A DNA stretch of 64,000 nt from Macrostomum lignano (taxonomy: Eukaryota), in assembly GCA_002269645.1 (NCBI GenBank), contig NIVC01001862.1, positions 164,288 to 228,287 of the forward strand, in the 5' to 3' direction. Each line of letters starts with the position of its first letter. Position 1 is the first letter of the stretch. The notes beneath the pieces were generated by a model. That model ran no database searches, was not told where the DNA came from, and saw nothing but the letters and a program-made list of their open reading frames with translations. Made by a program: the position numbers and the translations under genes. Positions 14,529 to 16,674 of the stretch are shown one piece after another.

Positions 14529-16674
14529 CTACACCAAAGCTACAAAGCGGCGCACATATTCCTTGATGATGGAGTCCACATCAACATTGTCAGGCAAGCC
14601 AAGGCTAACCGCCCTGGAGTGATCGACAGCCGGCACAACGTTCATCGACTTGAAGCTGAAAGGCGATTCGGCCAGACTGGACTGGGTGATGGCGCCCAGC
14701 TTGATGTCCAATTCGGCTGCGACTCGTTGCGTTGCCGCCCAGATCTGGCGCAGAGTCAGAGACCTGGAAGGAAGATCGTGAAGACTTCGTAGAGTCAGGG
14801 ACAGACAGACAGACAGACAGACAGACAGACAGACAGACAGACAGACAGACACACAGAGAGACAGACAGACAGACAGACAGACACTAAGACAGACAGACAG
14901 ACAGAGAGACACTAAGACAGACAGACAGACAGACAGACACTAAGACAGACAGACGGACAGACAGACACTAAGACAGACAGACAGACAGACACTAAGACAG
15001 ACAGACAGACACTAAGACAGACAGACAGACAGACAGACACTAAGACAGACAGACAGACAGAGAAAGACAGACAGACAGACAGACACTAAGACAGACAGAC
15101 AGACAGACACTAAGACAGACAGACAGACAGACAGACAGACAGACAGACAGACAGACAGAAAGACAGACAGACAGACAGACAGACAGACAGACAGACAGAC
15201 AGACAGACAGACAGACAGACAGACAGACAGACAGACAGACAGACAGACAGACAGACAGACAGACAGGCACTAAGACAGACAGACAGACAGACACTAAGAC
15301 AGACAGACAGACAGACACTAAGACAGACAGACAGACAGACAGACAGAAAGAAACGATGACGTGGACTTTTGCGTGGGAGTCAGACACATTACTCCCAACA
15401 GACAGAGACGCTAAGACACAAACAAATTGAAAACAAGAAAAAAGACCTGGCAGGCAGTTGTACAACCCGATTGTGCCCCAGCTGCTCGGCAGTCACTTTG
15501 CCAGCCAGTTTAATCAGACATCGGCAGTTGTTATCAATGCAGGAGCAGGGGTACGGATAGTCCATGTCCGGGTAGACAGTGTAATCCCGGCCCAGCAGAG
15601 TCTGCGTGAAGATCATGCTGTAGGACGAGGAGACGCTGTTGCTGAACCCCGGCCGGCCAATCACGGCCGAGATTCGAGCTACTCGACCGTCGATGAAGCC
15701 GTGTCGGCTGTAGTCGCATACCAGCAGCTCGACGCACGCCTTGTGCACTCCGTAGGACGTCGGGGACAGTCGGAAGGCCTCCTCGTTGATTGGCACTCGT
15801 CTGTTGGTGTCGTTGAAACAGGCGACGTAGTCGGTGCTGACGTACACGTAGATTTGAGGCCGGCCGAGCTTGACACCGAGAGCGCGAACCTGCTCAATCA
15901 CAGTGATTGCGCCGAACAGATTTACCTGGATAAAAAGTTCAGGATTTCTTTGTTATTTGAATCTGGATTTAGCTGATCGAACGTTGCTCTATGGGTGGCA
16001 AGTTGTCATGAAGTGCGCTCTATATATGGAATGGTGGCTCAGTAAGCGGTAACCTCGAAGAGCGTCGGACTCACGACTGAAAGGTCGGGGGTTCGATTGT
16101 CGACCAACTCGAAAAAATTTGTGTCCTTAAGCAAGACACTTAACTCTGCATTGCTTCAGTTCACCCAGCTGTAAAATAGTTGGCGGCATTAGCTTAACGA
16201 AATTGAGTGTGACGACCTTCCCATCCCCAGTCTTTCGACTTAACAGCCGTACGCAGCCTTCAGATGCGCCGCGCAATAAGTATTACTATCATTATTATGT
16301 AGTACGACGCAACGTCGATAAACTGTTGAGCCCACCTGCATTCCGCCGTCGAAATTAGCTTCAGCCTGTCCGCTAAGCATGGCGGCCAGGTGAAAGCTGA
16401 CCACAGTTCGGCAGTCGGTCGCGCGTGGCCTCAGAGCCTCGGCAGTGTCTTCAGCTTTTGTGAGACTGCCGAGCACCAAGCAGCAGCGACTGTCCTCGTC
16501 GCACTGACGTCGCATGAAGGCATCGGACGAGTCGGCAACGTCGAACAGCACGATGCTCGACACAGGAAGTTTCTCGTTGGCCGACACGCGCAAGTTTCTG
16601 CGTCTACAAAGCGTTTCGACGAGACGTCGACCCAGGAAGCCGTTGGCTCCGATTACGACAGCTTGAACGCTCAT
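14529..16674 (-). CDS. NAD-dependent epimerase/dehydratase (extended SDR), D-erythronate dehydrogenase DenD-like, 350 aa; complement(join(14529..14763,15447..15925,16336..16674))
   Basis: GANGFLG Rossmann motif and YGVHK catalytic Yxxx[24 protein letters not shown] and [16 protein letters not shown] resemble DenD-family signatures recalled from bacteria. Two GT-AG introns (phase 0 and 2) restore one ORF. Confidence 0.85.
14800..15350. repeat. (ACAG)n microsatellite with periodic acactaag interruptions, in DenD-like intron 2
   Basis: Direct. Confidence 0.95.
16030..16300 (+). mobile_element. tRNA-derived SINE with CORE-like central domain (copy 1), in DenD-like intron 1
   Basis: A-box tggctcagtaagcgg, B-box ggttcgatt, then gtgtccttaagcaagacacttaactctgcattgcttcagttcacccagctgtaaaat resembling the MIR CORE consensus. 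A second copy lies at 22187-23658 (-). Confidence 0.8.

What the first reader, a model, noticed from the sequence alone, without database searches (positions are those of the whole stretch)
14529..16674. Bacterial DenD-like dehydrogenase with spliceosomal introns: horizontal transfer candidate
Seen: a 350-aa SDR in three exons, with a SINE and an (ACAG)n tract in its introns, so it is part of the host genome and not contamination. Recalled knowledge: SGQAEADFDxGxxVN and ELLVxDYSRKGFxDGR mark D-erythronate dehydrogenase (DenD) of bacterial four-carbon acid-sugar catabolism. The metazoan SDR-type threonine dehydrogenase lacks these motifs. Inference: a domesticated HGT gene for dietary sugar-acid use. 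Divergence in the substrate loop ([13 protein letters not shown]) suggests altered specificity.
Basis: partly seen in the sequence, partly recalled or inferred. Interest (0 to 1): 0.7.

Follow-up and report, generated by a model that had tools for sequence, protein, structure and literature searches.

The report
Flatworm DenD-like dehydrogenase, eukaryotic lineage
This is a real, intact, intron-bearing flatworm (Macrostomum lignano) gene for a sugar-acid-dehydrogenase-like enzyme, but its closest relatives are in choanoflagellates, other protists and one annelid rather than in bacteria, so it is not a recent bacterial import, and how the flatworm got it is still open.

Summary
A 350-aa extended-SDR gene lies on the minus strand in three exons (16674-16336, 15925-15447, 14763-14529) with GT-AG introns. 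Intron 1 carries a tRNA-like dispersed repeat and intron 2 a (GACA)n array. The protein is 100% identical to Macrostomum lignano PAA63230.1. Two further genomic copies share both intron positions, and one of them shows the same FREM-like neighbour.

The family call is half right. Bacterial D-erythronate dehydrogenase (DenD) is the nearest characterised family, ahead of TDH. But the protein scores 162 bits against a 325-bit cutoff and is only 31-35% identical to bacterial DenD.

At 46-55% identity (full-length hits) it belongs to a eukaryotic clade (NJ bootstrap 100). The clade holds at least 12 choanoflagellate species, arcellinid amoebae, euglenozoans, a chlorarachniophyte, marine environmental sequences and one other animal, the annelid Owenia, whose copy is intronless. 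The "divergent substrate loop" is largely a feature of the whole clade.

Direct bacterium-to-flatworm transfer is not supported. Two routes remain: vertical descent with many losses in animals, or an old transfer from a protist. My likelihood tests mildly disfavour the two animals grouping together (ΔlnL 15.4, p≈0.04), but long-branch effects confound them. The substrate is unknown. Interest is modest.

The parts
16336..16674 (-). Exon 1 (codons 1-113). Holds the ATG, the Rossmann motif G9-x-x-G12-x-x-G15, D45 (the NAD-type acidic residue after beta-2) and the start of the [13 protein letters not shown] motif.
   Evidence: translation, GT donor at 16335; invariant G9, G12, G15.
15926..16335 (-). 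Intron 1, 410 nt, phase 0, GT..AG. The same position is used in all three M. lignano copies.
16032..16278 (+). tRNA-like dispersed repeat (SINE-like), antisense to the gene. The degenerate tRNA-Arg-like head is at 16032-16110, with A-box-like and B-box-like sequences (read by eye). The body extends to about 16278.
   Evidence: ARAGORN, relaxed threshold only; second copy at 22259-22483, 79% identity; also present in L006 and L007; no Rfam hit and no strict tRNA call.
15447..15925 (-). Exon 2 (codons 114-272 plus 2 nt). Holds the catalytic S143, Y171 and K175, the [16 protein letters not shown] motif and the loop [19 protein letters not shown].
14764..15446 (-). Intron 2, 683 nt, phase 2, GT..AG. 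Mostly a (GACA)n/(ACAG)n array at 14800-15351. The intron is 225 nt and 682 nt in the two paralogous loci.
14529..14763 (-). Exon 3 (completes codon 273, runs to codon 350, plus the stop at 14529-14531). Encodes the C-terminal substrate-domain helices.
14317..14519 (.). (TGTC)n array just 3' of the stop codon. It is the reverse complement of the intron-2 array, so exon 3 is bracketed by inverted arms of about 200 nt.
   Evidence: 95-97% complementary; both arrays also in the paralogous loci.

Best explanation
Window 14529-16674 (minus strand) encodes an intact nuclear gene of the flatworm Macrostomum lignano. Its product is a cytosolic, NAD-preferring extended short-chain dehydrogenase. It belongs to an uncharacterised eukaryotic sister group of bacterial D-erythronate 2-dehydrogenase (DenD).

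Shown:
- The three-exon structure with canonical introns.
- Three genomic copies with identical intron positions, one of them with the same FREM-like neighbour.
- The intact GxxGxxG motif and Ser143/Tyr171/Lys175 triad.
- A confident GalE-like fold.
- Membership of a clade of eukaryotic sequences at 46-55% identity (full-length hits), against 31-35% to bacterial DenD.

Inferred:
- The enzyme oxidises a hydroxyl of a small hydroxy-acid or acid sugar with NAD+, by the usual SDR proton relay: Tyr as the base, Lys lowering its pKa, Ser polarising the substrate.
- The substrate need not be D-erythronate. The loop that reads RPGKPNKAAS in bacterial DenD reads RPG[W/F]SNSIS in the whole eukaryotic clade.
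- The Macrostomum protein carries 11 further changes at positions that are otherwise conserved in at least 90% of the clade.

Origin: it is not a direct bacterial import. The gene has been in the Macrostomum lineage long enough to gain two private introns and a repeat insertion before the duplications that gave three copies. I cannot separate (a) vertical descent from the ancestor shared with choanoflagellates, followed by loss in nearly all animals, from (b) an old transfer from a microbial eukaryote. I rate them about equal. The confidence given applies to everything except that choice.
For: Gene model and splice sites.

Identity to M. lignano PAA63230.1, and two more copies on contigs of 78 kb and 374 kb with the same introns and the same repeat, one of them (L007) with the same FREM-like neighbour.

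Animal neighbours in the window.

Pfam Epimerase 45.2 bits against a cutoff of 20.9.

AlphaFold model with mean pLDDT 91 and pTM 0.91; best PDB match 2hrz, then GalE-like epimerases and TDHs.

Invariant G9, G12, G15, S143, Y171, K175 and near-invariant D45.

Hit ranking (eukaryotes 1e-90 to 1e-112, bacteria about 1e-30) and the bit-score gap in the profile search (290 down to 236).

Taxon names: 12 choanoflagellate species, Owenia, Difflugia, Pyxidicula, Hemistasia, Apiculatamorpha, Norrisiella, Ploeotia.

NJ bootstrap of 100 for the eukaryotic clade, and midpoint rooting between it and all 129 other sequences.

NF043036 scores of 162-233 bits for eukaryotes and 459-467 for bacteria, against a cutoff of 325.

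dN/dS among the three copies is 0.18-0.49, and intron 1 differs more (2.7%, window against L006) than the coding sequence (11 of 346 codons).

GC3 is 0.70, against 0.53-0.65 for neighbouring animal ORFs, so there is no strong foreign composition.
Against: No expression or activity data were available here.

The Macrostomum branch is 3-4 times longer than those of its relatives. It deviates at 11 of 83 positions conserved in at least 90% of the clade, against 1-2 for Owenia and S. rosetta. This could mean relaxed constraint rather than a working enzyme.

The dN/dS values rest on 5-15 substitutions per pair.

The eukaryotic clade consists mostly of transcriptome or metatranscriptome sequences whose organism labels cannot be verified here.

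The ultimate origin of the eukaryotic clade, possibly an ancient bacterial transfer, was not tested with an outgroup.
Confidence: 0.8

Rival explanations
1. Origin route A, vertical descent. The gene was present in the common ancestor of choanoflagellates and animals. It survives only in a few spiralians (Macrostomum, Owenia) and was lost independently in all other sampled animal lineages.
For: The gene occurs in at least 12 choanoflagellate species from both Craspedida and Acanthoecida, and the four acanthoecid sequences sampled in the trees group together. It was therefore probably ancestral in the sister group of animals.

Both animals that have it branch early in their phyla (background knowledge).

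The Macrostomum gene has private introns, a host-like GC3 and three copies, so it is an old resident.

The alien index is about +25 (Owenia 4.3e-101 against S. rosetta 6.8e-112). That is below the thresholds of 30-45 I recall being used to call a transfer.

Deep placements of Macrostomum are only 4.6-6.3 lnL worse than the best one.
Against: Only two animals appear among all named hits, even with a profile query. That requires roughly a dozen or more independent losses.

Macrostomum and Owenia never group together. Forcing them together costs 15.4 lnL (SE 8.8, KH p about 0.04) and the stem joining them has zero length.

No intron position is shared. Owenia is intronless. The choanoflagellate intron lies after codon 231, and the Macrostomum introns lie after codon 113 and inside codon 273.
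Confidence: 0.45
2. Origin route B, old eukaryote-to-animal transfer. A Macrostomum ancestor acquired the gene from a marine microbial eukaryote, for example prey, and Owenia acquired its intronless copy independently. The flatworm copy then gained introns and diverged quickly.
For: The distribution in animals is extremely patchy.

Likelihood placement puts Macrostomum next to protist or environmental groups and never with Owenia or choanoflagellates. With the outgroup it falls by the Hemistasia group (LWR 0.87). Without the outgroup it falls by env028/env057 (LWR 0.91).

Animal monophyly is mildly disfavoured.

The Owenia copy is intronless.

The clade's internal topology does not follow the species tree: arcellinid amoebae fall among choanoflagellates and euglenozoans are scattered. 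This would fit a family that moves between eukaryotes.

Bacterial denD-like genes have been reported as transferred into Lepidoptera (PMC12477841), so the wider family has a record of entering animals.
Against: The three branches that attract Macrostomum are among the longest in the crown of the tree. That is the classic long-branch signature.

Its deviations at clade-invariant sites are almost all private. Only L110G is shared, with env028/env057.

No candidate donor exceeds 60% identity.

The tree used a home-made Gonnet+G4 likelihood on a fixed NJ backbone, and Owenia's own placement changed between analyses.
Confidence: 0.45
3. One reading: a gene transferred directly from a bacterium into the flatworm lineage and then domesticated, encoding a true D-erythronate dehydrogenase for catabolism of dietary four-carbon acid sugars.
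For: DenD is the nearest characterised family and shares several motifs with this protein. The gene is nearly absent from animals.
Against: About 85 eukaryotic sequence clusters are far closer than any bacterial protein: 46-55% identity for full-length hits against 31-35%. In the exhaustive search the strongest full-length hits (bits 202 and above) were members of the clade already found, named protists (Norrisiella, Ploeotia) or unnamed metagenome sequences, and none had an identified bacterial source.

The eukaryotic clade has 100% bootstrap and lies across the midpoint root from all the other, mostly bacterial, sequences.

The score is half the DenD equivalog cutoff.

The candidate substrate loop differs.

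The large ORFs scanned in the window showed no partner genes of the bacterial pathway (otnK/DUF1537, otnC, otnI).
Confidence: 0.03
4. The locus is a decaying or non-functional copy, or an assembly or contamination artefact.
For: The branch is long, and 11 residues that are otherwise conserved in the clade are changed. One copy pair has dN/dS of 0.49.
Against: Three independent copies all keep the full ORF, the splice sites and the catalytic residues. dN/dS is below 1 in all pairs. The gene is embedded between animal genes on contigs of 78-374 kb, and the FREM-like neighbour recurs at a paralogous locus.
Confidence: 0.05

Closest known systems
Bacterial D-erythronate 2-dehydrogenase DenD (NCBIfam NF043036, KEGG K22025). 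It oxidises D-erythronate to 2-oxo-tetronate in the ltnD-otnK-otnI-denD-otnC pathway (PMC10580937, citing Zhang et al. 2016 PNAS).
   Same: Extended-SDR fold of about 320-350 aa. It is the best-scoring characterised family (1.6e-47). It shares the S-x3-E-x2-F...N and E-x4-DY-x-R-x-G-x2-DGR motifs, the catalytic S/Y/K triad and the NAD-type Asp.
   Different: Only 31-35% identical. The score is 162 bits against a 325-bit cutoff, while real DenDs score 459-467. The eukaryotic clade has a 5-residue insertion after the catalytic Ser (STDYVxCFN). The loop RPGKPNKAAS is replaced by RPG[W/F]SNSIS. There is no operon or pathway context.
Uncharacterised choanoflagellate proteins: the Salpingoeca rosetta 'nucleoside-diphosphate-sugar epimerase' and Monosiga brevicollis MONBRDRAFT_34110, with homologues in 10 other choanoflagellate species.
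   Same: These are the closest named relatives (54-55% identity over 99% of the length). They have the same length, the same clade-specific insertion and the same loop signature.
   Different: They have one shared intron after codon 231 (phase 0), not the Macrostomum positions. Their branches are much shorter. No function is known for them either.
Owenia fusiformis (annelid) CAH1773730.1 and CAH1773731.1
   Same: The only other animal with the gene. It belongs to the same clade (48-49% identity) and lies on a 62-Mb chromosome-scale scaffold.
   Different: It is intronless. It does not group with Macrostomum in the NJ or likelihood analyses. It keeps nearly all clade-conserved residues, with 2 deviations against 11.
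PDB 2HRZ, Agrobacterium tumefaciens 'nucleoside-diphosphate-sugar epimerase' (structural genomics)
   Same: Best match among solved structures by both sequence (7.6e-25) and fold (Foldseek 2.5e-23, TM 0.77-0.79).
   Different: 25% identity in the structural alignment. It has the bacterial-type loop RPGKPNAAAS. The entry description names no ligand, so it says little about substrate.
GalE-like (SDR-type) L-threonine 3-dehydrogenase, including the animal mitochondrial TDH
   Same: Same extended-SDR fold, with TM about 0.75.
   Different: The sequence match is much weaker (5.8e-10 to 2.8e-3 against 7.6e-25 for 2hrz). No TDH model is hit in NCBIfam.
Lepidopteran denD-like genes reported as bacterial HGT (PMC12477841)
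   Same: A precedent for a DenD-family gene sitting in an animal genome.
   Different: Those genes are reported to nest with bacterial sequences such as Achromobacter. The Macrostomum gene nests with eukaryotes. I did not analyse the lepidopteran genes here.

Membership tests
Extended SDR / NAD-dependent epimerase-dehydratase superfamily (PF01370) | Pfam score above the gathering threshold | tested here: met
   45.2 bits against 20.9, covering residues 6-250.
Extended SDR / NAD-dependent epimerase-dehydratase superfamily (PF01370) | N-terminal GxxGxxG dinucleotide-binding motif and catalytic Ser/Thr...YxxxK | tested here: met
   G9, G12, G15, S143, Y171 and K175 are invariant in the alignments.
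Extended SDR / NAD-dependent epimerase-dehydratase superfamily (PF01370) | Two-domain GalE-like fold | tested here: met
   AlphaFold model with pLDDT 91. The top Foldseek hits are 2hrz, UDP-GlcNAc 4-epimerases and TDHs, with TM 0.72-0.79.
D-erythronate 2-dehydrogenase DenD (NF043036 equivalog) | Score at or above the curated equivalog cutoff (325 bits) | tested here: not met
   162.3 bits. Seven other eukaryotic clade members score 168-233. Two bacterial DenDs score 459 and 467.
D-erythronate 2-dehydrogenase DenD (NF043036 equivalog) | Bacterial-type loop after beta-6 (RPGKPNKAAS), a candidate substrate-binding loop | tested here: not met
   Macrostomum has [10 protein letters not shown] and the clade consensus is RPGxSNSIS (x = W or F). 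The bacterial sequences and 2hrz have RPGKPN(K)AA(A)S. That this loop binds substrate is an inference from SDR architecture and has not been shown for DenD.
D-erythronate 2-dehydrogenase DenD (NF043036 equivalog) | Association with the rest of the pathway (OtnK/DUF1537 kinase, OtnC, OtnI) | tested here: inconclusive
   No such domains were found in the 10 large ORFs scanned from the 64-kb window or in the genes called around the choanoflagellate, Owenia and metagenome homologues. Eukaryotic pathway genes need not be linked, and the whole genome could not be searched.
D-erythronate 2-dehydrogenase DenD (NF043036 equivalog) | NAD+-dependent oxidation of D-erythronate to 2-oxo-tetronate | not testable with these tools
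   Needs an enzyme assay.
SDR-type L-threonine 3-dehydrogenase (TDH) | Best sequence similarity to TDH proteins or models | tested here: not met
   TDH chains score E 5.8e-10 to 2.8e-3, against 7.6e-25 for the DenD-like 2hrz. No TDH family appears in the NCBIfam scan.
Bacterium-to-animal horizontally transferred gene | Physically integrated in the host genome, with host introns, repeats and neighbours | tested here: met
Bacterium-to-animal horizontally transferred gene | Nearest relatives, and the enclosing clade in a tree, are bacterial | tested here: not met
   The nearest relatives are eukaryotic at 46-55% identity over the full length, against 31-35% for bacteria. The eukaryotic clade has bootstrap 100.
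Bacterium-to-animal horizontally transferred gene | Absent from related animals | tested here: inconclusive
   Owenia is the only other named animal in two searches of 5.8 billion proteins. Unannotated animal genomes and transcriptomes, including other Macrostomum species, could not be searched.
Eukaryotic DenD-like clade (unnamed; choanoflagellates, protists, Owenia) | Groups inside the clade and carries its signature insertion (STDYVxCFN) and loop (RPG[W/F]SNS...IFTQ) | tested here: met
   NJ bootstrap 100. Alignment columns. Profile score of 535 bits against 236 or less for bacteria.

The most novel reading that the evidence does not exclude
An uncharacterised eukaryotic DenD-like dehydrogenase has entered animal genomes at least twice by transfer from microbial eukaryotes. 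One transfer went into a Macrostomum ancestor, where the gene gained introns, triplicated and evolved rapidly towards a new specificity. A separate transfer went into the Owenia lineage, where it remains intronless. This would make it a case of recurrent protist-to-animal gene transfer of one metabolic enzyme.
Probability: 0.35. Interest if true: 0.5.

Novelty: new member of a known kind. Interest (0 to 1): 0.3.

Why it matters
The locus corrects a tempting but wrong call. A gene that looks bacterial when judged against characterised families is in fact part of a eukaryotic lineage of DenD-like dehydrogenases for which I found no characterisation.

That lineage is widespread in choanoflagellates and scattered in other protists. 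It occurs in only two of the animals represented in the databases searched here. This makes it a small but clean test case for telling differential loss from eukaryote-to-animal transfer.

It also flags an enzyme subfamily whose candidate substrate loop differs from that of DenD and whose substrate is unknown. M. lignano is a laboratory model with working RNAi and transgenesis (background knowledge), so the function could be tested there. The practical importance is modest.

Tried and rejected
1. Shared intron positions as proof of vertical descent. Owenia is intronless. The single choanoflagellate intron lies after codon 231. The Macrostomum introns lie after codon 113 and inside codon 273. 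Nothing is shared, so the test is uninformative.

2. Strict tRNA and Rfam detection of the SINE. Both found nothing. Only relaxed ARAGORN and a second diverged copy support it.

3. Profile search for more animal members. It returned essentially the same set plus one new environmental sequence.

4. Identifying the organisms behind the environmental sequences nearest to Owenia and Macrostomum. The records give only run accessions (ERR550519, SRR29179179) or contigs of about 1 kb.

5. Looking for a donor signature in shared derived residues. The Macrostomum changes at clade-invariant sites are private, apart from L110G.

6. Compositional evidence of foreign origin. GC3 is 0.70, only slightly above the neighbouring genes at 0.53-0.65.

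7. Literature search for MONBRDRAFT_34110. It found no paper.

8. Bacterial genomic context as a control. The one Pseudomonas DenD examined sits in a sugar-acid-type cluster (MFS transporters, an IlvD/Edd dehydratase, FAA hydrolases, an NAD_binding_2 dehydrogenase) without DUF1537. Operon context is therefore not a uniform hallmark even in bacteria.

9. TDH assignment: rejected.

10. Contamination: rejected.
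Full report
**What is at the coordinates.** Reading the minus strand of window 14000-17200 and the six-frame ORFs gives three coding blocks. Joined at 16674-16336, 15925-15447 and 14763-14529, they form one 1053-nt reading frame of 350 codons plus a stop. Both introns have GT donors and polypyrimidine-AG acceptors. The first is in phase 0 after codon 113 and the second in phase 2 inside codon 273.

Intron 2 is mostly a tetranucleotide array at 14800-15351 with 138 copies.

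Intron 1 contains a tRNA-like sequence. ARAGORN recognises it as a degenerate tRNA-Arg-like cloverleaf at 16032-16110, but only at a relaxed threshold. The default ARAGORN run and an Rfam scan at E ≤ 0.1 find nothing. A second copy, 79% identical over 233 nt, lies at 22259-22483. So it is a dispersed repeat, and calling it a SINE is reasonable though not proven.

**Whose genome it is, and whether the gene belongs there.** The protein is 100% identical to Macrostomum lignano PAA63230.1. Its cluster holds two more M. lignano proteins of 348 aa, on contigs of 78 kb and 374 kb. I fetched both loci (L006, L007). They have the same two intron positions and the same tRNA-like repeat in intron 1. Their intron-2 arrays give intron lengths of 225 and 682 nt, against 683 nt in the window.

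In the window the gene sits between a FREM/FRAS-like extracellular-matrix gene (Frem_N and Cadherin_3 domains, 1342-8679) and an M13-peptidase-like gene (29651-31831). L007 shows the same FREM-like neighbour.

Among the three copies dN/dS is 0.18-0.49, based on few substitutions. Intron 1 has diverged more than the coding sequence: 2.7% between the window and L006, against 11 differing codons out of 346. GC3 is 0.70, against 0.53-0.65 in the neighbouring animal ORFs. Contamination and a recent arrival are both excluded.

**What kind of protein it is.** Pfam places it in the NAD-dependent epimerase/dehydratase family, which is the extended SDRs (45.2 bits against a threshold of 20.9). An AlphaFold model built on a 19-sequence alignment is confident (mean pLDDT 91, pTM 0.91). 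Its best solved-structure match is 2hrz from Agrobacterium tumefaciens, followed by GalE-like epimerases and SDR-type threonine dehydrogenases.

G9, G12 and G15 of the Rossmann motif and the catalytic S143, Y171 and K175 are invariant in the alignments. D45 after strand β2 is nearly invariant, which is typical of NAD rather than NADP preference. There is no N-terminal extension before the Rossmann motif and no PTS1-like C-terminus, so I infer a cytosolic location.

**Is it DenD?** The only strong NCBIfam match is NF043036, D-erythronate dehydrogenase (1.6e-47). But the score is 162 bits against a curated cutoff of 325. Seven other eukaryotic relatives score 168-233 bits, and two bacterial DenDs score 459 and 467.

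By sequence against the PDB, 2hrz scores 7.6e-25 and threonine dehydrogenases 5.8e-10 or weaker.

The two recalled motifs are present in slightly different form ([31 protein letters not shown]). Their core residues are invariant across the eukaryotic and bacterial sequences aligned.

Bacterial DenDs and 2hrz read RPGKPN(K)AA(A)S, whereas the whole eukaryotic group reads RPG[W/F]SNSIS[YW]..TGIFTQ. Macrostomum ([18 protein letters not shown]) differs from that consensus at only a few more positions. The eukaryotic group also has a five-residue insertion after the catalytic serine (STDYVxCFN).

DenD itself oxidises D-erythronate to 2-oxo-tetronate in the ltnD-otnK-otnI-denD-otnC pathway (PMC10580937). 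None of those partner domains turned up in the large ORFs scanned from the window or next to the eukaryotic homologues, though that is weak evidence for a eukaryote.

I conclude that it works like an NAD-dependent hydroxy-acid dehydrogenase of the DenD type, but it fails the membership test for DenD proper. Its substrate is open.

**Who its relatives are.** In a search of 5.8 billion proteins, the best non-self hits are Salpingoeca rosetta (55%, 6.8e-112) and Monosiga brevicollis (54%). Dozens of full-length sequences at 46-55% identity follow, and only then bacterial DenDs at 31-35% and E about 1e-30.

Cluster look-ups name the following:
- Choanoflagellates, 12 species across both orders: Mylnosiga, Craspedida sp. 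UC1, Salpingoeca urceolata, S. infusionum, Hartaetosiga, Stephanoeca, Didymoeca, Helgoeca, Acanthoeca and an acanthoecid, plus S. rosetta and M. brevicollis.
- Arcellinid amoebae: Difflugia and Pyxidicula.
- Euglenozoans: Hemistasia, Apiculatamorpha and Ploeotia.
- A chlorarachniophyte: Norrisiella.
- One other animal: the annelid Owenia fusiformis, with two near-identical copies on a 62-Mb scaffold.

An exhaustive HMMER scan of 1.84 billion representative proteins found no closer bacterial group. A profile search added only one new member and showed a score gap between the eukaryotic set (290 bits or more) and bacteria (236 bits or less). In an NJ tree of 202 sequences the eukaryotic set is a clade with 100% bootstrap, and midpoint rooting separates it from all 129 others. 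The claim of a direct bacterial donor therefore fails.

**How the flatworm got it.** Two routes remain.

Intron positions do not help. The Owenia gene is intronless. The two choanoflagellate genomes share one intron after codon 231. The Macrostomum introns are private.

I wrote a small likelihood framework: a Gonnet-derived exchange matrix, four gamma rate categories, and placement on an NJ backbone with optimised branch lengths. Macrostomum, on a pendant branch of 0.7-0.8 substitutions per site, attaches best to the Hemistasia group (likelihood weight 0.87). With the outgroup and the longest branches removed, it attaches to two environmental sequences (weight 0.91). It never attaches to Owenia or to choanoflagellates.

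Forcing the two animals together costs 15.4 log-likelihood units after full optimisation (SE 8.8, one-sided KH p about 0.04), and the stem joining them has zero length. This mildly favours separate origins.

However, the favoured attachment branches are among the longest in that part of the tree. Owenia's own placement moved between analyses. Macrostomum's 11 deviations at 83 positions otherwise conserved in at least 90% of the clade are almost all private. Long-branch attraction could therefore explain the result.

On the other side, the gene's presence throughout choanoflagellates, the sister group of animals, makes ancestral presence in the common ancestor plausible. An alien index of about +25, computed from the E-values, is below the thresholds I recall being used to call a transfer.

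I rate vertical descent with many losses and an old protist-to-animal transfer as about equally likely, and a direct bacterial transfer at about 3%.

**Comparison with what is known, and novelty.** The protein is already in GenBank and UniProt as a hypothetical or 'epimerase domain-containing' protein. Bacterial denD-like genes have been reported as HGT in Lepidoptera (PMC12477841). That is a different event, and there the genes are reported to nest with bacteria.

What is new here is limited to two points. First, Macrostomum and Owenia carry members of an uncharacterised eukaryotic DenD-like clade. Second, that clade differs from DenD in a candidate substrate loop. I class the locus as a new member of a known kind and give it modest interest.

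**Seen in passing.**
- Exon 3 is bracketed by inverted tetranucleotide arrays of about 200 nt that are 95-97% complementary. The same arrangement is present in the paralogous loci.
- A UniProt gene model (A0A1I8IR85) fuses the upstream acidic-repeat ORF (18593-19984) to this gene.
- Several protist members of the clade end in PTS1-like tripeptides.

Noticed in passing
window 14317-14519 and 14800-15351 (also L006 and L007): Exon 3 is flanked by inverted tetranucleotide arrays: (TGTC)n just after the stop codon and (GACA)n in intron 2. The arms are about 200 nt and 95-97% complementary. In the pre-mRNA they could form a long duplex that loops out exon 3, with possible effects on splicing, back-splicing, editing or genomic stability. 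Both arrays are kept in all three gene copies, with differing lengths.
   Followed up: partly
window 18593-19984 (-): A 463-aa ORF rich in Asp/Glu, with NEEAEVD-type repeats and no Pfam hit, lies directly upstream on the same strand. UniProt model A0A1I8IR85 (809 aa) fuses it in frame to the DenD-like ORF. This suggests either a read-through or polycistronic transcript, or a gene-model artefact. An upstream ORF of similar size (457 aa) lies in the same position in L007.
   Followed up: partly
window 22259-22483: A second, diverged copy (79% identity over 233 nt, opposite orientation) of the tRNA-like repeat found in intron 1. This indicates a dispersed repeat family in M. lignano.
   Followed up: no
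window 1342-8679 (+) and 29651-31831 (-): There are large ORFs with Frem_N and multiple Cadherin_3 (CSPG-type) repeats, that is a FRAS/FREM-like extracellular-matrix gene. Separately there is an M13 (neprilysin-like) peptidase gene. Both are ordinary animal genes flanking the locus.
   Followed up: partly
alignment A1 (P0008, P0031, P0051, P0007): Several protist members of the clade end in -AKL, -PKL or -SKL, which look like peroxisomal/glycosomal PTS1 signals. These are Difflugia, Hemistasia, Apiculatamorpha and one environmental sequence. The Macrostomum, Owenia and choanoflagellate proteins do not.
   Followed up: no
L001 6001-7035 (Owenia fusiformis CAIIXF020000001.1): The Owenia homologue is a single uninterrupted ORF in what I take to be an intron-rich animal genome (background knowledge, not checked here). 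It exists as two >90% identical proteins on the same chromosome-scale scaffold. This is compatible with retroposition or a separate acquisition.
   Followed up: partly
window 13500-13713: A minisatellite with a 20-nt unit (GATGATTTGACTGACTGAGT, about 10.7 copies, with an 80-nt higher-order period) lies about 0.8 kb beyond the gene's 3' end.
   Followed up: no
L002 7576-8756 (ENA metagenome contig k141_2296858, 59.9 kb): A clade member 60% identical to the Macrostomum protein over its C-terminal two thirds is called as two abutting ORFs of 141 and 251 aa. It lies on a contig with eukaryote-type genes (ELO, JmjC/Cupin_8, a FAD/NAD-binding reductase). This is probably an unidentified microbial eukaryote with a frameshift or a short intron.
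   Followed up: no
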